From NCBI GenBank assembly GCA_028826165.1, contig JAPDFW010000085.1, positions 1 through 64,000 of the forward strand: a DNA stretch of 64,000 bases, read 5' to 3'. The stretch is from Anaeramoeba ignava BMAN. Its lineage: Eukaryota; Protista; Anaeramoebae. The notes beneath the pieces were generated by a model. The model ran no database searches. It was not told where the DNA came from and worked only from the letters and a program-made list of their open reading frames with translations. A program made the position numbers and the translations under genes. Numbering within the stretch: the stretch's first letter is position 1; each line of letters opens with the position of its first letter. Below, piece by piece: positions 6,941 to 62,300 of the stretch.

Positions 6941-9900
6941 TTAATAATTTTGAAGGAAATCATTTAAAAATAAATCAATTATTGAATTTGGATTTAATTG
7001 ATAATAATTTTTTAAATCTTTAAATTCTTCAATCATTTTCCGAAAAATTTTGTTTTCATCAAGTTTATCATTATAAAGAAAATAAATAAATTGATTTAAT
7101 GTTTGAGAAGATTTTTGTGTTTTATCATGAACTTGATTAGATTTATCTTGAATATTTAATTGAAACATTCTTTTGAATAATTCACTTCTTATTATCAATA
7201 TTAATTTATGAACTTTGATTTTCTTTTCAATTTTCTTTTCAATTTCAATTTCAATTTCTTCTTCATTTTTCTTTTCAATTTCAATTTCTTCTTCATAAAT
7301 TATTGTAAAATCTTTTTTTGAATCATCTTCTTTATATAATTTTTTGAAATCTTTTATTATTCCATTTCTTTTGGATTTGGATTTAATCCAATTTGAATCA
7401 AATCCAATTTCTTTAAAAAATTCTTCATTAATTTCCATTTCTTCTTCTTCAATTCTTTTTTCTTCTTCTTTTTCTTCATTTCTTAATTTATAATTAATTT
7501 TGATTTTTTGAGTCAACTCATTCCATGAAATTTTTTTTGTTTTATAATATTCATTTTCAATTTGTTTAATTTGATTATTATAATTGATTAAATTGTTAAT
7601 TCTTTGAATAAAATTATCAAAATTAGGAAATCCAGTATAAATGAAATTAATTACAATTTCAACAATTTCTTTTGGATTTTTTTTGCAATTGTCAATAAAT
7701 TTTTCTAGAATTGATTGATTATAATCAAATCTTAATAAAAGAATTTGTTTATGAACTTTGAATTTAAATGAATCTTTTGTTTCAATTTCAAAATCTGTTA
7801 AATTATCATTTGATTTTAATAAATTATTTAGATCTTGATTAATTGAATAAATTTTGGGAAATAAATCAATCATTTCTTGAGCAATTTCGTAATCTGTTAA
7901 TTGGAAAATATCAACATCGTTTAATAACAAAATCTTAATAAAATTGGAATCTTTTCTTAGGATTGCGTAATGTAATAAAGTTTGATTATAACTATTTTTG
8001 GCATTGACATCTGAACCTTTCTTAATCAAATATTTTATGATTTGAAATGATGGTTGCTTTTGATGTTGATAGGCATAGTGTAAAGGTATTTCGTTGTATT
8101 TGTTTTTGGCATTGACATCTGCTCCTTTTTTAATAAGAAATCTGATCACAAATATTGAGTACTTATGGTTTTGATTTTGACAAGCAAAGTGTAAAGGTGT
8201 TTTATTTGAATCGTCTTTGGCATTGATATCTGCTCCGCTTTCAATAAGAATGTCGATCACTTTACAAGAGTTTTTGTCTTGGTGAAAAAGACAAAGAAAA
8301 TGCAACAAGTTTTGATTGAATTTATTTTGGACATTGATGTCTGCACCGTTTTCTATTAAATATCTGACAATTTCAAGTGAGATTTGATTGTGTTGATGTC
8401 GACAAGCTAAATACAAAGGTGTTTGATTATCACTATTTTTGACATTAACATCTGTTCCCTTTTCTATTAAATATTTGACAATTTCAAGTGATGCTTTGTG
8501 TTGAAATTGACAAGCATAATGTAACGGTGTTTGTCTCATTATATTTTGGACGTTGACATTTAATCCATTTTGAGAGAGTTTTTTGATAATTTCAAACGAA
8601 GCTTGATTTTTTTGAAATTGACAAGTATAATGTAACGGTGTTTGGGAGATGTTGTTTTTGAAATTAACATCTGCTCCATTTTCAACAAGTATTTTGGTCA
8701 TTTCAAATGCGATTTGTGGATTTTTTTGAAATTGACAAACTAAATGTAATGGAGTTTCGTTAATGCCACTGTTGACATTGACAAATGCTCCTTTATTGAT
8801 GAGAAACTTGAGAATTTTGATTGCATTTTCATTTCTTTGAAATTGGCAAACATAGTGTAAAGAGGTTTCGTTTTCAATATTTTTGGCATTGACATCTGCA
8901 CCTTTAAAAATCAAATATTTTATAATTTCAAATGTGTTTTCATGCTTTTGATATTTGCAAACTAAATGCAATAATGTTTCATGTTTGTAATTTTTGGCAT
9001 TAACACGTGAACCTTTTTCAATTAAATATCTGACAACTTCATATGTGTTAAATTTGTTTTGAAATTGACAAAGTAAATGCAACGGAATTTCATTTTTGTT
9101 ATTTTTGATATTGACATCTGCTTCATTTTCAACTAGTAATTTGATAATAGGAAATGTATTCAGATTTTTATATTTACAAGCAAAATGTAAAGGTGTTTCA
9201 TCGTATTTATTTTTGGCATTGACACTCGCACATTTTTGAATTAAATACTTAATAATTTCAAATTTGTTTAAATATAGCATTTGGTTTTGTATTTGACTCT
9301 GAATTTGATTTTGAATTTGCATTTGAATTTGATTTTGAATTTGAATTTGATTTTGCAAATGATTTTGAAAATGAATTTGATTTGGGAAATGTATTTGAAT
9401 AGGATTTTGATTTGAAAATTGGATTTTGATTTGATTTTGATTTTGATTTTGAAAAGGAATTTTTTCTTTTATCAATAAAATTTGATTTTGATTTAAATTT
9501 TTAATTTGAATTTGATTTTTAATTTGATTTTGATTTTGATTTTGATTTTGGTTTTGATTTAAATTTTGATTTTGATTTTGATTTTGATTTTGATTTTGAT
9601 TTTGATTTTGATTTTGATTTTGATTTTGATTTTGATTTTGATTTTGATTTTGATTTTGATTTTGATTTATGATTTTGATTTTGATTTATATTTTGATTTT
9701 GATTTATATTTTGATTTTGATTTTGATTTTGATTTTGATTTATATTTAAATTTTGATTTTGATTTTGATTTTGATTTAAATTTTGATTTTGATTTAAATT
9801 TTGATTTTGATTTGATTTTGATTTTGATTTTGATTTTGATTTTGATTTTGATTTTGATTTATATTTTGATTTTGATTTTGATTTTGATTTATATTTTGAT

Positions 9901-11333: not shown

Positions 11334-13205
11334 TCATTTATTTTCATTTTCTTTATTCAAAAATAAATCAATTAATTGAATTTAGATTTAATTGGAAATA
11401 ATCTTTAATATCTTCAAATTCTTCAATTATTTTCAAATTTATTTTATTTTCTTCAATTTTATCATGATAAAGGAAATAAATAAATTGATTTAATGTTTCA
11501 AATGATTTTCTTGAATAATCATGAACTTGATTTAGATTTATCTTCAATATTTAATTGAAACATTCCTTTGAATAATTCACTTCTTAAAAATAATATTAAT
11601 TTATGAACTTTGATTTCTTTTTCATCTTCACAAATTATTGTAAAATCTTTTTTTGAATCATTTTCTTCATATAATTTTGATAAATCTTTTATTATTCCAT
11701 TTCTTTTGGATTTGGATTTAATCCAATTTAAATCAAATCCAATTTCTTTAAAAAATTCTTCATTAATTTTCATTTTCATTTTCAAATTCTTTTTCAATTT
11801 TTTCAAATTTTTCTTTTAATTCTTCAAATATCTTTTTATTTTCTTTAATTTTTTCATAATAAAATGAATGATTAATTCCAAGAAGATCATCATCAGAATA
11901 TCCATATTTTTGATATTCATTATATTTTTTTAAATCTTCTTTATTTTCTTTTTCTTTAAATTTTAATTCTTTTAAAACTTGGAATTTTTGAATTAAATTA
12001 TCAAAATTAGGAAATCCAGTATAAATGAAATTAATTACAATTTCAACAATTTCTTTTGATTTTCTTTTACAATTATTAATAAATTTTTGTAAATTTAATT
12101 GATTATAATCAAATCTTAATAAAAGAATTTGTTTATGAACTTTGAATTTAAATGAATCATTTGTTTCAATTTCAAAATCTGATAAATTATCATTTGAATT
12201 TAATAAATTATTTAGATCTTGATTAATTGAATAAATTTTGGGAAATAAATCAATCATTTCTTTTGTAATTTGTTTATCTGTTAATATTAAAATATCTGCA
12301 TTATTTATCATTAATAATGTGATTAAATCTTTATCATATTTATATATTGAATAAAATAAAGGTATTTTTTGATGAAGATCATTTTCAATTTCAATATTAA
12401 GATCAATATTGCGAATTTTTTGAATAAGTAATTTGATAACTTCACTTATTTTTGGATTTTTAGTTGTTTGAATAATTTCGTTTTCACAAATTAATTGTAA
12501 TAATGTTTTTCCATTATCATCTATTATGTTAACATCAGCTCCGTTTTCAATTAAATATTTTATAGTTTCGGATGATTTTAATTTATTTTGAAATTGAAAA
12601 ACATAATGTAAAGGTGTTTTTCCTGATTCATTTTGGGCATTGACATCTGCTCCATTTGCAACCAAAAGTTTAACAATTTCAAATAAGTTGTTAGTTTTTT
12701 GAAATTGACAAGCTAAGTGTAAAGCAGTGTTATTCAAAATATCTTTGGCATTAAGATCTGCTCCATTTTCAAGTAATATTTGCAATACTTCATATGCATT
12801 TTCTTTTTGATATTCACAAATTAAATGTAAAAAAGAACCATGAAAAGTGCTTGTGGTATTAATTTCAATTCCTTTTTCAATCATCAATTTGACAATTTCT
12901 ATTAAATTTATTTTTTGGGTTTGGAATTGACAAGCATAATGTAAAGGAGTTTCTTTATGATATTTAGTTTTGGCATTGATGTTTGCACCATTTTCAATTA
13001 GATATTTTATAATTTCAAAAGAATTTGGTTTGTTTTGAAATTGACAAGCATAATGCAAAGGAGTTTCTTTTGATTTATTTTTGGCATTGATGTTTGCGCC
13101 ATTGTCAATTAAAATTTTAATTTTTTGGAATGATTTTTTTTTTGGGAATTTACAAACTATATGTAAAGATGTTTGTTTATTTTTATTATTATAGTTTTTT
13201 TTCAT
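11334..13205 (-). CDS. Ankyrin + 2 BTB protein, array copy 5 (three +1 frameshifts at ~11770, ~11533, ~11373)
   Basis: ORFs 11763-13205 and 11519-11806 plus a manual reading to DLFLNKENENK* reconstruct the family C-terminus. Confidence 0.8.
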
Positions 13206-13324
13206 TTTTGAATCAACTAAGAAATAAAATAAAAAAATGAAAAAGTTTTACTTTTATTTTCTGAAAATTAATTGTTAAAAAAAAAAAAAGAAAAGAAAAC
13301 AATTTAGTCTCATTTCATTTCATT

Positions 13325-44963: not shown

Positions 44964-46951
44964 TCAAAAAATAAAGCATTTATCTTTTTTTGATCGATTT
45001 TGTTGAAGTTCGATTTGATATTTTAAAGAAGTATTCTTATTTAATTGATAATAATCAACAACATCTTCCATTTCTTTAATAACTTGAACTGGTAAATTTG
45101 AATCAAAATCATCCAAATAAAAAAAACGAATCAAATGACGAATTGTTGATATAGATTTTCTTGAATAATCTTGCACTTTATTAGAATCATCTTTGACACT
45201 TAAAAACATCCCTCTAAAAAGATCACTTCTAGAAATAAGAATAAGCTTATGAACCTTAATTGATTCTTGATTAAAAATAATTTCGAAATCTTTTGATTCT
45301 TGATCCAAAAATAATTTTTCTAAATCTTTTAAAATTCCATTTCTTCCACAAAAAGTATGAAATTTTGGGATTCCAATTTCAGTTGAAATTTGATCAACTG
45401 CAACATAACCATCTGGTGAAATAATTCCTGAATATAAAAAATTTATATATATTTTCACATGTTCAAGTGGTTCTTTTTGAAATATTTTGAGTGCTTTTTC
45501 TAATAAATCCCCAAGTCTTAATTTCATTATTAAAGAATGAGCTTTGCATTCCCCATTTTTTGCTTTAATATCAAGATCGCAAAATTCTTGTCTTTCAAAT
45601 AATGCTTTTAGATCTTGATTTAAAGTTGTATAACATTCTAGAAAGCTTTTAACTTCTTTGTTTGTTGTTAGTTCTTGTGGCAATCTATTCTATGTATTTT
45701 GTAACATTGCCATTTAGTATTTTTAAATATTTCTATAATTTTTTTTTTACTTCCTTCAACATTTTAAAAGAATAGATTTAAAAAATTCAATTTAAAAAAA
45801 TCGGATAAAAATTCAATTTAAATTACAGTCTGTTTTGATTTAATTAATTTTTAATTGATAATTTTAAATCAAAAATTATCAATACATTTTGTATTGTTGG
45901 ATCTGCTCCAAAATCTAAAAGCATTTGAATAACTTCAAGAGGTAATTTCTTAAAACAAGCATAATGTAATGCTGTGTTTCCCTTTAATTGTAATTTATAT
46001 AAAAAAATTCAATTCATTTCTTAATGCAAATTTGCTTTCAATTTACTTTCTATTTCCAATTTCGTTTTCTTTTTACTTCATTTCTTTCCAAATTCCTTTT
46101 TTTTAATTTGTAATTTTTACATACTAATTTTTAAGTAAGAAATTAATTTCTAGTTAATTTCCAAGATTTTTGAATAATATTCATCAAAATTAATTCTACA
46201 TTTTGAAGGTTTATATATGTTCCATATTCTAAAAGAAAGGAGATTGCTTGTTTAGAAAGATGAGATCCACAAAGATAAATTAAAGGAGTATAATTCTAAT
46301 TTGAAAATTGAAATTATTGAATAAATTTTTTCTTTCTGTTTTAATTTCCAAAATGAAAATTAAATCAAAATTGTTACTCCCTTAAAAAAAATATACAAGA
46401 AATATTTGAATTGGAATGTAAATTACTTTATAAATAAATTTGTAAAAGAAAAGAAAAGAAGAGAAAAAATTCACATTCTAAATATTTTTTTAATTAAAAA
46501 ATTAAAAAAATTTTCAATTAAAAAATAATTATAAAAAGTATTTTTGTTTTAACATTTTGATAATTAACATCAGCTCCAAGTGAAACTAATAATTCAAAAA
46601 TTCTATGTTTGTTATTATTTTCATTGCTTCCCATTGCAGCATAATGTAAAGGAGTATTTCTCTATTTTCAAAATGAATTTTAAATAATTTTCTAAATAAA
46701 ATTTCTATATAAAATTTACGTGCTAAATTAATATTATTAATTTTTAAATTGAAATTTCAAATTTTGTGTCTTTTTTTTGATTTAAAATTTACACTCTAAA
46801 AAAATTGATTTTTTTTTTAAATTTTATTTTAAATTTTAAATAGAAATTATAAAGTTTTATTCACATCAGCTAAATTTAAATCATGAGTTTTAAAAAATTC
46901 TTTGATTCCATCTAAATCTTCTTTTTGTAATAATTCTAAAAAAGTTTGCAT
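44964..46951 (-). CDS. Short ankyrin + 2 BTB protein with C-terminal CaaX (CFIF), 378 aa, 13 exons including eight 3-nt micro-exons; main exons 46865-46951, 46554-46661, 46200-46295, 45886-45981, 44964-45689
   Basis: Spliced product: MQTFL...LNLAD-S-H-RNTPLHYAA...DVNYQN-N-G-NYTPLIYLC...INLQN-Y-K-GNTALHYAC...DPTIQN-T-E-NRLPQEL...CKAHSLIMKLR...IKVHKLILISRSDLFRGMF...KKDKCFIF. All 12 introns are GT-AG, phase 0, 56-94 nt. Confidence 0.88.
45751..45753 (-). other. 3-nt micro-exon (GAA, Glu)
   Basis: Minus strand gttgaag|GAA|gtaaaa; flanking introns 73 and 61 nt. Confidence 0.78.
45827..45829 (-). other. 3-nt micro-exon (ACT, Thr)
   Basis: Minus strand aaaacag|ACT|gtaatt; flanking introns 56 and 73 nt. 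Confidence 0.82.
46047..46049 (-). other. 3-nt micro-exon (AAA, Lys)
   Basis: Minus strand gaaatag|AAA|gtaaat; flanking introns 71 and 65 nt. Confidence 0.8.
46121..46123 (-). other. 3-nt micro-exon (TAT, Tyr)
   Basis: Minus strand aaattag|TAT|gtaaaa; flanking introns 76 and 71 nt. Confidence 0.82.
46378..46380 (-). other. 3-nt micro-exon (GGA, Gly)
   Basis: Minus strand ttttaag|GGA|gtaaca; flanking introns 94 and 82 nt. Confidence 0.78.
46475..46477 (-). other. 3-nt micro-exon (AAT, Asn)
   Basis: Minus strand tatttag|AAT|gtgaat; flanking introns 76 and 94 nt. Confidence 0.8.
46720..46722 (-). other. 3-nt micro-exon (CAC, His)
   Basis: Minus strand aatttag|CAC|gtaaat; flanking introns 70 and 58 nt. 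Confidence 0.82.
46793..46795 (-). other. 3-nt micro-exon (AGT, Ser)
   Basis: Minus strand tttttag|AGT|gtaaat; flanking introns 69 and 70 nt. Confidence 0.8.
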
Positions 46952-56342: not shown

Positions 56343-59300
56343 TCAAATCTGGAAAAAAAACTTTGATGAAGGAGGAAGTTGAGTTGTAAGTAATCTAATA
56401 AAATTCAAATCAACTGTTGTTTGATATTTTTGTTGAATCCATTTAACAACAACTCTTTCAAGAGAATCTTTTGATTTTGTTTGAATCAAAAATTTATGTT
56501 TCTTAACAACAGGATTGCTCTCATTAAGAAGAGCATAAAAAAATAAACAAGTCCATAAAGGATCGCCTAAAGAATTTTGTGATAAATTTGGAAGAGAATT
56601 TGTAATGTCTTCAAAATCAGAATCAGAAAAATCAAATTCACTTTTTTCATATTCACTAAATACTGGAAATGATGGAGTTGTTGGAACTTTTCTCATCATT
56701 GGATTTATTTGATTTTGATTTTGATTTTGATTTTGGTTTTTTTTCTTTTTCTTTTTCTTTTTATCCTTTTTTTTCTTTTCAATTTCTTGAATTTCTTGAA
56801 TTTCTTGGAAATCAAATTCACTAAAAGAAACATCTTTTGATTTTGAACGAACTTTGAATATAAAACTTGAATCGGAATCAGAATCAAAATTCATTTTCAA
56901 ATCCGGAACAGAAATCATGATTGGAGATTCAACAAAGGATTTGCGATTTGATTCTCTTGTAAATTGAAGATCTTCATCAAATCTTTTTTTTTGATTTTGA
57001 AGAAAATCAATCACAGAATCATTGATTGCAACAGCAAGTGCACGAACCCAAGTTTCAATGATTTTCTGACTCTCGCTCCCAAAAACAAATGTGCCTTGAG
57101 GAGTAGTCATTTTGAATGTGTATTGAATAGGCCCTTTGTTATTTAAAGGAACAATTGGATGTAAAAATATTTTCATTGTTGAAAGTCGATATTGAACTTG
57201 GAAAAATGTTTGCTTGCTTGTTTTGCACACAAGAAGCATATCGCTGAAAAGAAACAAATAGCGCGGTGAAAATGTTGTGTTCGGATTCAAAATAGGAAGC
57301 TCAGGAACAAGTGCGTTTTGGATCGCTATTGAATGAACTTTGCGAAGTTTTTTTGCATAAAATTTTTGTATTGATTGCTTGTCAACTTTTTCTTGATTGA
57401 GTTTTTGTGTGAATTTTGGATCGATGTTTGCTTCAGGAACAAAAATCGGATTTGTAGTTGTTTGCTGTTGATTGTTGTTGTTGTTTGTGGTATTTGATTC
57501 GCTTTGTTGTTTCCAGTTTTGAGGATCACTGATCGAATCAGAACACAAAGAAACACCATCATGTGAATGAGAAAGATGATAGTGGTTCGTTGGTGAGCGA
57601 AGTAGTGTTTTTTGACTATAATAAGACTGGGTCAACATGTGATTTTTTGGTAGATGCGTATTTGTTCTTTTTTGAGATTGATGAATTTGTTGTTGGTTCA
57701 GATTTTGTATATTTTGTGGTATGTGTTGATTGAAATCAATCAAATAAAGAACACCTTCAAGTCGGAATTTGCGTGATTTGCTCCCACTCAGATTGATATT
57801 TGTTCCCGAAATCATTTTCTGGATATTCTCAATTTTGAACGAATCTTCGTACTTTCTTTTTGTTTCGTTGATATTGTTTGCATATTCTTTCATTAATGTC
57901 AAAGCATTTTGAAGTGAAGAATAATCGGGATGATCTTCCGGAGTTGATTTCAGAACCTCCTTGGAGAAGAAGAGGGTATTGAGCTATGCGTTGTACCGGC
58001 TTTATCAAGACTGAATCCAGTGAGAGCTTTTCTTGGCTCATCCCAATCGATGTTGTTTTGCTGAGATTTGCGAATGGATTGTTTCCTGACATTTTCCGTT
58101 TTATTGTATTTTTTAGCATTTCATAATTCAGGTTAAAATCGGCGTATTTTGTCATTGTTGGCGCAAAATCAGTCATAACATCTCCAATCCCAACATCATA
58201 ATTCCAGTTCGCAATTTTTAATTCAAATTGGTTAAGCAAACTTACATTAGCGTTAACAATTTGTTCCACATTTTCCAAAAGTGGTAAAATATCTTCGTTT
58301 TGAGAAAAAGTCTTCATCAAAGGAACGATAACAATATCAAGAAGATCTTTGATTGAAAAGACATAATTCCGCTCAGTTTCTACAAGCTCGAGAATTGATG
58401 ATACCCGTTGAAACTCTTTATTCACAAGCTCTTTACAAGGTGAATTGTATTTTGTCGCCAGTATATGAGGACGCTCTTCGGGATGAGGAAGCAATAGATC
58501 CGCGCCTGCTTGCAGAAGACGTTTGCAGATCGCAACATCTCCCCATTGAACTGCAAGATGGAGCGGATACTCCCTTTTTTTGTTCATAACGTTTGGATTT
58601 TCTGTCTTTTCAAGAATAATTTCAAATATTTTCGGATTTTTGGAACTGAGCGCGTAATGCAGATATGTATTTCCTTCTGAATCAATGATATCCATCAGGT
58701 AATTTTCGCTGATTAACTTCTTGACATTTTCTTCATCCGTTGATAAAATGGCTTCTTTTAAAGGCGATGGACTTCCCTTTAAAAGTAGATATTCTGCTAT
58801 TTTTTCATGCCAATCCTTGTTTGCCAAATCAAATGGTATTTTTCCATGAAGATCTTTAATTGCAAGATCAGCTCCAAAATTAACAAGCAATTTGACACAT
58901 TCAAAATGTCGATTTGAACTGGCCAAATGAAGTGGTGTTTTTTGTTGATCATTTTGACAGTCAATTTTGGCTCCTTTTGTGATTAAGAATTTCAAACTCA
59001 ATATCTGACCATTTCCTGCAGCCAAATGAAGAGCAGTCCAACCGTTGGAATTAAAAGCATCAATATTGGTGCTTATCAATTGGATCCATGAAAGAAACTT
59101 GGGTTTTGAGAACATGACAGCATAATGCAAAGTTGTATTTCCTTTATGGTCGGTTAAATTGACATCAAGTCCCGAATTTAGCAAAGTTTTAAAGCATCCT
59201 AAATTCTTGTTGAATTTGATACACAGATGAAGCGGTGGGATTTTATCTGCTGTTGGTTTGACTTCAATTCCTTTTTCAATCAAATTTTGCAGTATTTCTG

Positions 59301-62300
59301 CTTGCTCTTCTTCAATCGCATAATGAAGTGCATTATTCCCTTCTTTATCGTTTAAATTGATGTTGGAATTTTTCTTGATGAGAAGCTTTGCAGTTTCTAT
59401 TTGGTGTTTTTTTATTGCCAACATGAGGAATGATCTTCCTTTGGAATCCTGAATATTGAGATTAACTGGGATTTTTGTTTGTGAAGTAAGAAGCATAAAA
59501 ATAACTTGGATATGTCCATTTTGGATTGCTATTCCAAGTGGTGTTTGATTTTCTGAGTCAAGCAAGTTTGGATTTGCTCCAAATTTCAAGAGTTCGCCAA
59601 TCATCACTGAATTTCCAGTTTTGGAACATAAATGAAGCGGTGTTATTTGTTGATGATTTGTTGGGTTGATATCAACCAATGATTTTTCAAGTATGATTTT
59701 TGCTATATCATCTTGATTTTGAAGAATTGCTGTGTGTAAAAATGTGTTTCCTTCAAGATCTTGGAAAGAGAAATCGGGGTTTTGCTGAAGCAATAAATTA
59801 AATATTTGTACTTTTCCTTCGTTGATTGATAAACTTAAAGGTGAACATTTTGTTCGATCAATAGAATTGATTTGATTTTTTTTTTTGAGAAGTTCTTTAA
59901 CAATTTTAATGTTTCCTTTTTGTATTGAGAGGTGAAGAGGTCTATTTCCTTCTAGATCAAAATCTAATTTTGGATATTTTAATTTGAATATTTTAATTTG
60001 AATATTTATTTTAAATATTTTATTTGGATATTTAATTTGAATATTTTATTTAAATATTTAATTTGAATATTTAATTTGAATATTTTAATTTGAATATTTT
60101 AATTTGAATATTTTAATTTAAATATTTTTAATTTGAATATTTATTTGAATATTTTTAATTTAAATATTTTTAATTTGAATATTTTTAATTTAAATATTTT
60201 AATTTGAATATTTTTAATTTGAATATTTTTAATTTGAATATTTTAATTTGAATATTTTAATTTGAATATTTTAATTTGAATATTTAATTTGAATATTTAA
60301 TTTGAATATTTAATTTGAATATTTATTTGAATATTTAATTTGGATATTTAATTTGAATATTTATTTTAATATTTAATTTGGATATTTAATTTGGATATTT
60401 ATTTTAAATATTTTTAAATATTTTATTTTAAATATTTTAATTTGAATATTTTTAATTTGAATATTTATTTAAATATTTATTTTATACCATCAAAATCCAT
60501 TTCTTTTTCCTTGTCTTTTTCCTTGTCTGTTTCCCTTTCTTTATACTTTAAAAAACTTCTAATTTTTTTAATATTTCCTTGTTTAATCATTTCATGTAAA
60601 GGAAACTGAGGAGAATTTTTTTGTAAATAATTGCAAATTTCGAAAAAATTATTTCTTTCAGCTTCAACATAAGGAGTTAAATAATTTTCATCAACAACAT
60701 TAACTTTAGCATCATTTTGAACCAAAATTTTCACAATTTCTAGATTCCCACTTAATACTGAATAATGTAAAGCTGTTTTTCCTGCTTTTGACAAAGCATT
60801 TAAATCAATTTTTTCCTTAAATTTCATAATTTCCTTCATCATTTCAACTCTTGAATTTTTTGCTAATAAATGAATTGGTAAAAATCCCTTTTTATTCATT
60901 TGTGTAATTGGAGTTATTTTTTGAATTAATGTTGAAAATGATTGAAATCGATTTTCAGTTATTGCTATATTAATTGGATAATTTCCTGCATTATTAGTAA
61001 CTGAAATTAAAGAAGAATCAGCATCTAATAAAGATTCAATAATTTCTGAATTATTTGAAAATGAAGCCCAATGAAGACAATTCCTTTTAAAATTTGATAT
61101 ATAATTTTGATATAAATATAAATATTGAATATAAATATAAATATAAATATAAATATAAATATAAATATAAATATAAATATAAATATAAATATAAATATTT
61201 AAAATAAATATAAATATAAATATAAATATAAATATAAATATAAATATAAATATAAATATAAATATAAATATTAATATAAATATAAATATAAATATAAATA
61301 TAAATATAAATATAAATATAAATATAAATATAAATATAAATATAAATATAAATATAATTATAAAATATAAATATAATTATAAATATAAATATAAATTATA
61401 AATATAAATATAAATATAAATATAAATATAAATATAAAATATAAATATAAATATAAATATAAATATAAATATAAATATAAATATAAATATAAATATAAAT
61501 ATAAAATATAAATAAATATAAATATAAAAATATAATTATAAATATAAATTATAAATATAAATATAAAATATTAAATATAAATAAAACATAAACAATTATA
61601 AATATAAATATAAATATAAATATAATTATAAATATAAATATAAATATAAATATAAATATAAAATATAATTATAAATATAATTATAAATATAAATATAAAT
61701 ATAAATATAAAATATAAATATAAAATATAAAATATAAATATAAATATAAATATAAATATAAATATAAATATAAATATAAATATAAATATAAATATAAATA
61801 TAAATATAAATATAATTATAAATATAAATATAATTATAAATATAAATATAAATATAAATATAAATATAAATATAAATATAATATTAATATAAATATAAAT
61901 ATAAATATAAATATAAATATAAATATAAATATAAATATAAATATAAATATAAATATAAATATAAATATAAATATAAATATAAATATAAATATAAATATAA
62001 ATATAAATATAAATATAAATATAAATATAAATATAATTATTAATATAAATATTGGATCAAATTTTGATTGATTTTTTGATTAAATTTTTCATTTGAATTT
62101 AATTACCATCCTCTTTGATCTTTAATTTGAAGTTTAGCCTTTTCAGAAATAAGTAAATTAACAAAAGAAATTTTATTAAACCAACAAGAATATTGAAGAG
62201 GAGTTAAACCCGAAGTTGTTTCAGGTAAATTAATATCAATACCAGAACTAATCAATATTTTGGCAACTTCTATATAATTTTTGGCAATTGAAATATGTAA

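What the first reader, a model, noticed from the sequence alone, without database searches (positions are those of the whole stretch)
45690..46864. Eight single-codon (3-nt) micro-exons, in four pairs, build the beta-hairpin of each ankyrin repeat
Seen: the five normal exons of the 44964-46951 gene break at the same point of each ANK repeat (LAD|RNTPLH, YQN|NYTPLI, LQN|GNTALH, IQN|NRLP). Joined directly, each repeat lacks the two residues of the canonical D/N-x-x-G-x-T-P-L-H hairpin. Each ~200-260 nt gap contains two AG|NNN|GT units, evenly spaced so the gap splits into three 56-94 nt introns, similar in size to the shortest introns of neighbouring genes. Units: 46793-95 Ser, 46720-22 His; 46475-77 Asn, 46378-80 Gly; 46121-23 Tyr, 46047-49 Lys; 45827-29 Thr, 45751-53 Glu. 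None is a stop, and all donors match local GT(A/G)A usage. Including them gives DSHRNTPLH, NNGNYTPLI, NYKGNTALH and NTENRLP. My rough chance expectation at this base composition is ~0.2 such motifs per gap, so two in each of four gaps is unlikely to be chance. Established: very short micro-exons exist in animals and plants, but standard gene finders and aligners miss them. Inference: consecutive single-codon exons repeated in register with a protein repeat is an architecture I do not recognise. It implies intron-definition splicing with three introns at consecutive codon boundaries, probably propagated by duplication of an exon/micro-exon/micro-exon module.
Basis: partly seen in the sequence, partly recalled or inferred. 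Interest (0 to 1): 0.95.

Follow-up and report, generated by a model that had tools for sequence, protein, structure and literature searches.

The report
Single-codon exons in ankyrin hairpins
In the anaerobic amoeba Anaeramoeba ignava, many ankyrin-repeat genes write the two loop-tip amino acids of each repeat as two separate 3-base exons; transcript-derived proteins of two sister genes contain exactly these residues, while the public annotation leaves them out.

Summary
Observation confirmed. Eight AG|NNN|GT units lie two per gap and give twelve phase-0 introns of 56-94 nt. The genome is Anaeramoeba ignava BMAN; its NCBI model (370 aa) skips all eight.

The layout is genome-wide: 727 tandem 3-nt pairs, against 14 (4-nt), 41 (2-nt) and 20 (6-nt). 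Among 244 chained units there are no stop codons (about 20 expected), and codon usage matches the genome.

New here is transcript-level support. Two EukProt transcriptome proteins of paralogs carry two extra residues at 12 hairpins. In one, 14 of 14 residues match 3-nt exons I had read from DNA beforehand. In the other, 3 of 3 tested junctions map uniquely to such pairs.

No sign of skipping was found. An A. flamelloides homolog shares the first intron position, with suggestive pairs only.

This scan noted the class before on other DNA of this genome (20 notes); the follow-ups shown had no RNA support. I found no paper describing it.

The parts
46865..46951 (-). Exon 1, 29 aa, N-terminal capping repeat, ends at Asp (hairpin position 1)
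46793..46795 (-). 3-nt exon, AGT Ser (hairpin position 2)
   Evidence: inclusion inferred from paralog transcripts
46720..46722 (-). 3-nt exon, CAC His (position 3)
46554..46661 (-). Ankyrin-repeat exon, 36 aa
   Evidence: Pfam Ank E 2.4e-8
46475..46477 (-). 3-nt exon, AAT Asn
46378..46380 (-). 3-nt exon, GGA Gly
46200..46295 (-). Ankyrin-repeat exon, 32 aa (TPL motif; no Pfam hit on its own)
46121..46123 (-). 3-nt exon, TAT Tyr
46047..46049 (-). 3-nt exon, AAA Lys
45886..45981 (-). Ankyrin-repeat exon, 32 aa
   Evidence: Pfam Ank E 1.7e-8
45827..45829 (-). 3-nt exon, ACT Thr
45751..45753 (-). 3-nt exon, GAA Glu
44964..45689 (-). Last exon, 241 aa + stop: C-capping segment and BTB/POZ domain
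   Evidence: Pfam BTB E 6.4e-11; 100% identical to residues 130-370 of NCBI KAJ5071736.1

Best explanation
The gene is a 13-exon ankyrin-BTB gene (378 aa) of A. ignava. Three ordinary GT-AG spliceosomal introns sit at three consecutive codon boundaries of each ankyrin beta-hairpin (after positions 1, 2 and 3), so positions 2 and 3 are each a 3-nt exon. They are included in the main mRNA. SHOWN for two paralogs; INFERRED for this gene. Mechanism (inferred): each short, very AT-rich intron (56-94 nt) is recognised across its own length (intron definition) and removed in turn, so exon size need not matter. In such AT-rich RNA, AG and GT are rare enough that the nearest sites are the right ones. 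Because all units are phase 0 and 3 nt, any one intron can be lost or a unit added without a frameshift. That explains the variants seen: 6-nt fused exon, residues absorbed into either neighbouring exon, intronless copies, and long single-codon loops. Origin (inferred): the first intron position is shared with A. flamelloides; the triple-intron module spread with repeat and gene duplication; tandem duplication of an intron-plus-codon unit is seen to build long runs elsewhere in the genome.
For: Transcriptome protein P0276 maps to 24 exons, 14 of them 3 nt, and all 14 residues had been read from DNA earlier. Transcriptome protein P0274 has five 2-residue insertions, and 3 of 3 tested map once genome-wide, in order, to AG|codon|GT pairs on C93. 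Length spectrum peaks at 3 nt: 214 against 6-29. Zero stops in 244 units against ~20 expected, P 6e-10, and zero TAA/TGA first units genome-wide. Codon bias equals that of the genome. The G-to-T spacing is 12 in intronless paralogs and unrelated ankyrins but 10 in NCBI direct-join models. Where units are absent or fewer, the residues usually sit in a neighbouring exon or a 6-nt exon.
Against: Residue order within pairs was not distinguished from swapped order (P 0.35 and 0.09). At least one natural two-residue-short hairpin with a single 68-nt intron exists (L022), so short hairpins are tolerated. De novo assemblies show the main isoform, not inclusion levels. Pfam scores do not consistently favour the longer proteins. 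Intron definition was not tested.
Confidence: 0.92

Rival explanations
1. The micro-exons are real but alternatively skipped, giving combinatorial variants of the ankyrin binding surface, a diversification system like schistosome micro-exon genes.
For: All units are symmetric phase 0, so any subset keeps the frame. Positions 2 and 3 are among those randomised in DARPin binder libraries (PMC8248824) and are the most variable columns here (3.3 and 3.8 bits). The ANK-BTB family is greatly expanded.
Against: Both transcriptome proteins include all 12 pairs. Skipping shortens the hairpin rather than swapping residues, and there are no mutually exclusive alternatives at the ANK pairs. Intronless paralogs have the same kind of variable residues without introns.
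Confidence: 0.12
2. In this particular gene the units are decayed or unused, and the mRNA uses the direct joins as annotated by NCBI (370 aa).
For: The NCBI model has direct joins. No transcript record exists for this gene. A short hairpin occurs naturally at least once.
Against: NCBI models also skip the units in the two genes where transcripts include them, so the annotation is a systematic miss. All eight units here are intact, stop-free and in the standard layout.
Confidence: 0.05
3. The motifs are chance AG-NNN-GT strings, or non-coding stepping stones for recursive splicing.
For: One gap alone has P(>=2) near 0.1. Single look-alike units do occur by chance in AT-rich DNA.
Against: Strict 3-nt specificity, stop avoidance, codon bias and presence in transcript-derived proteins. 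Recursive sites leave 0 nt, and there is no excess at length 0.
Confidence: 0.02

Closest known systems
Schistosoma micro-exon genes (MEG)
   Same: Tandem, symmetric very short coding exons (3-81 nt) that automatic annotation misses (10.1101/2023.06.21.545858).
   Different: MEGs are 35 secreted, lineage-specific genes with mostly 15-nt exons, 0.1-5 kb introns and alternative splicing. Here the exons are almost all exactly one codon, the introns 55-100 nt, the host is a universal folded repeat (ANK-BTB), the register follows the protein repeat, and no skipping was seen.
Plant constitutive micro-exons (APC11 and VPS55 1-nt exons; adjacent 5- and 12-nt exons in rice)
   Same: Very short, highly included coding exons missing from annotation; intronless paralogs absorb the bases (PMC8831610).
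   Different: In plants they are isolated or occasional neighbours, about half are not multiples of 3, and the most common size is 9 nt. Here there are hundreds of consecutive single-codon exons, with runs of ~10 to ~35.
Animal neural microexons (SRRM3/4, PRP-40 dependent) and the RPS24 3/18/22-nt cluster
   Same: 3-nt, frame-preserving exons exist; intron definition is proposed for exons too small for exon definition, and short flanking introns relieve the constraint (PMC8378409; RPS24).
   Different: Those are regulated cassette exons in long introns. These appear constitutive, in a unicellular metamonad, and come in consecutive series.
Ankyrin repeat / DARPin scaffold
   Same: Canonical D/N-x-x-G-x-T-P-L-H hairpin; the two micro-exon codons are repeat positions 2 and 3.
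   Different: The protein is ordinary; only the gene layout is unusual.

Membership tests
Coding micro-exon (<=15 nt) spliced by the major spliceosome | Flanked by AG and GT, with intron-sized spacers | tested here: met
   modal intron 76 nt
Coding micro-exon (<=15 nt) spliced by the major spliceosome | Present in mRNA (class level, paralogs) | tested here: met
   14/14 units in P0276; 3/3 tested pairs in P0274
Coding micro-exon (<=15 nt) spliced by the major spliceosome | Present in mRNA of this gene | not testable with these tools
Coding micro-exon (<=15 nt) spliced by the major spliceosome | Coding signature (no stops, codon bias, restores domain spacing) | tested here: met
Schistosoma MEG | Symmetric (3n, same-phase) micro-exons in tandem | tested here: met
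Schistosoma MEG | 10-20 micro-exons with 0.1-5 kb introns make up most of the coding sequence | tested here: not met
   8 of 378 codons; introns 56-94 nt
Schistosoma MEG | Secreted protein with signal peptide | not tested
   no predictor run; product is ANK-BTB, normally intracellular
Schistosoma MEG | Isoform diversity by skipping | tested here: inconclusive
   two assembled transcripts include every unit; levels unknown
SRRM3/4-regulated neural microexons | Regulated inclusion dependent on an SRRM3/4-type factor and upstream motif | not tested
   no search for the factor or motif was run
Recursive splicing sites | Zero-length AG|GT ratchet points that leave no bases in mRNA | tested here: not met
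   excess at 3 nt, none at 0 nt; residues retained
Introner-type intron gain | Near-identical intron copies at unrelated sites | tested here: not met
   ANK-pair introns 0.61 identical, equal to background; the L026 copies (0.91) are tandem, not dispersed; only ~280 kb examined
Ankyrin-BTB proteins | Pfam Ank and BTB domains | tested here: met

The most novel reading that the evidence does not exclude
Anaeramoeba uses single-codon exons as a working diversification layer. Regulated skipping, or rapid gain and loss of intron-plus-codon units, would vary the target-binding loop tips of hundreds of ANK-BTB adaptors one amino acid at a time, possibly in recognition of symbionts, prey or parasites.
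Probability: 0.12. Interest if true: 0.95.

Novelty: new variant of a known kind. Interest (0 to 1): 0.84.

Why it matters
It shows a spliceosome routinely joining consecutive one-codon exons, at least 727 tandem pairs and roughly 2,000 by extrapolation. That makes A. ignava a natural test case for the lower limit of exon size, for intron definition, and for the order of removal of adjacent introns. The presence/absence states of three introns at neighbouring codons give a readable record of intron gain and loss. In practice many ankyrin models of this genome in NCBI and UniRef lack the residues that form the binding surface, the published intron count and mean length are affected, and the same blind spot may hide similar layouts in other AT-rich protists.

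Tried and rejected

I fetched no more own-genome loci and used pattern searches only, so the local sample (~280 kb) is enriched for hits, not random. The genome-wide counts are unbiased.

Joined model: my own joined 378-aa model was not searched or folded; searches were exon by exon or used database protein ids.

Uninformative tests: the first genome pattern and the tool's reversed-pattern control, which is not composition-matched; length-shifted patterns replaced them. The residue-order test was not significant. Pfam scores with and without the residues were mixed. No clear branch-point consensus emerged. Searches with P0003 and P0241 returned generic ankyrins. Three look-ups for further A. 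flamelloides genes returned nothing. The two A. flamelloides strains are too close (~2%) to test conservation. Literature searches found no description in Anaeramoeba.

Full report
Verdict. The eight units are real in sequence and almost certainly are single-codon exons. The class is now supported at transcript level in two paralogs. The window gene's own mRNA could not be examined.

Observation. On the minus strand the gene runs 46951-44964. Between five large exons lie four gaps of 203, 258, 218 and 196 nt. They split the gaps into twelve phase-0 introns of 56-94 nt. Shuffling gives P(>=2) of 0.005, 0.010, 0.096 and 0.020 per gap.

Identity. The last exon is 100% identical to NCBI KAJ5071736.1 of Anaeramoeba ignava. 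The protein is ankyrin repeats plus BTB. The NCBI model is 370 aa, the direct join of the five large exons, eight residues short.

A genome-wide class. The pattern TAG-NNN-GTA, 50-80 nt, TAG-NNN-GTA occurs 727 times. With 4-, 2- or 6-nt cores it occurs 14, 41 and 20 times, mostly in simple repeats or one array. Allowing for other acceptors, donors and intron lengths, I estimate roughly 2,000 adjacent pairs; this is an extrapolation. In 282 kb of fetched DNA (enriched for hits) the length spectrum peaks at 3 nt, 214 against 6-29. Among 244 chained units there is no stop codon, where intron composition predicts about 20 (P 6e-10). Third positions are 94% A/T and synonymous choices follow the genome's codon usage. 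Genome-wide, no pair starts with TAA or TGA.

Register with the protein. Sixty-eight clean pairs in 20 loci precede an ankyrin TPLH-type exon. The spacing from the conserved Gly to the Thr is 12 in intronless paralogs (74 of 92) and unrelated ankyrins (285 of 329), but 10 in NCBI direct-join models. Where units are fewer, the residues are usually elsewhere: both in the upstream exon, both in the downstream exon, one in each place, or fused as a 6-nt exon. So the three introns can be present or absent separately. Two exceptions are a hairpin one residue short (L014) and one two residues short with a single 68-nt intron (L022). The order of the two residues was not statistically distinguishable from swapped order.

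Transcript evidence. Cluster look-ups of short-hairpin NCBI models turned up two EukProt (de novo transcriptome) proteins of A. ignava. P0276 (512 aa) differs from its NCBI model P0198 (498 aa) only by seven 2-residue insertions. Mapped on held locus L013, it uses 24 exons, 14 of them 3 nt. The residues EF, ND, IR, DA, RG, NN and KS are those I had read from the DNA, before finding the transcript. One pair is separated by a 678-nt intron. P0274 (541 aa) differs from P0250 (531 aa) by five such insertions. Patterns built from three of them each match once in the genome, on C93, in the right order, as AG|codon|GT pairs. The NCBI direct joins are therefore a systematic miss, not evidence of skipping. 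The window gene's cluster has no transcript member.

How it most likely works. Shown: canonical GT-AG boundaries, phase 0, and inclusion in the assembled mRNA of paralogs. Inferred: a 3-nt exon is too small for exon definition, and short introns are recognised across their own length, as proposed for animal microexons (PMC8378409). Introns of 7-21% GC offer few competing AG or GT sites. The two codons are repeat positions 2 and 3, which are among those randomised in DARPin binders (PMC8248824) and are the most variable columns here. That invites a diversification reading, but both transcripts include every unit and skipping would shorten the hairpin rather than vary it. I give constitutive inclusion about 0.8 and diversification about 0.12.

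Origin. An A. flamelloides ANK-BTB gene has phase-0 introns at the first of the three positions at most junctions, with the two residues at the start of the next exon. At the two junctions where its model lacks residues there is one close pair of units each (Gly/Ile in a ~700-nt gap; Asn/Ser in a 7.6-kb gap). Isolated look-alikes also occur there, so this is suggestive only. In A. ignava the ankyrin introns are not copies of each other (0.61 identity, equal to background), whereas a run of ~35 units on C1 has spacers 91% identical. Tandem duplication of an intron-plus-codon unit therefore builds runs; whether it founded the ankyrin triplet is not shown. Ankyrin loops of 3, 7 and about 10 single-codon units also occur.

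Comparison with what is known. Exons of 1-3 nt are known in plants and animals, and schistosome MEGs have tandem symmetric micro-exons. I found no report of consecutive single-codon exons as a genome-wide layout, and the genome paper's intron section does not mention them. The paper library is incomplete. The machinery appears ordinary and the architecture extreme, so I class it as a new variant of a known kind.

Earlier notes. This scan noted the same class on other DNA of this genome (20 notes); the follow-ups shown report no RNA support. My reading was formed before I looked. What is added here is the transcriptome-derived confirmation.

Limits. The joined model of this gene was not searched or folded.

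Noticed in passing
L026 (G000:C1 ~409400-413130, minus): About 35 consecutive single-codon units with 91%-identical spacers at the 3' end of a coiled-coil gene, spelling a stop-free R/N/Y/D-rich tail; a few units have GC or decayed donors; a ~1 kb ATT repeat interrupts the run.
   Followed up: partly
G000:C1:942332-942793 and 1058079-1073174 (minus): Further long runs of single-codon units with similar spacers, rich in GAT/ATG/ATT-type triplets; DNA not fetched, reading frame not checked.
   Followed up: no
G000:C71:339873-340942 (plus): Array of about 16 near-identical units with a 6-nt core; either a two-codon exon array or a minisatellite.
   Followed up: no
L021 (G000:C2 ~7150-9630, minus) and L017: Ankyrin hairpins extended by 3, 4, 7 or about 10 consecutive single-codon units with divergent introns.
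   Followed up: partly
window 1582-40357 (minus): Tandem array of about 16 long intronless ORFs, mostly ANK-BTB, 36-95% identical; used as the intronless control.
   Followed up: partly
L022 (G000:C2 ~418480-418670): Ankyrin junction with one 68-nt intron and a hairpin two residues short, possibly a deletion of both micro-exons.
   Followed up: partly
L027 11185, 11283, 6683, 6794 (A. flamelloides): Candidate single-codon pairs at the two junctions where the NCBI model lacks hairpin residues; at the first, the annotated donor looks five codons too early.
   Followed up: partly
window 56343-59793 (minus): ANK-RhoGEF-PH gene split over two overlapping ORFs, with GC 0.26-0.36, well above the rest of the window.
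   Followed up: no
window 13154-13156 and 13252-13260 (minus): Isolated AG-NNN-GT and AG-N9-GT motifs near the start of an intronless ORF; judged chance.
   Followed up: yes
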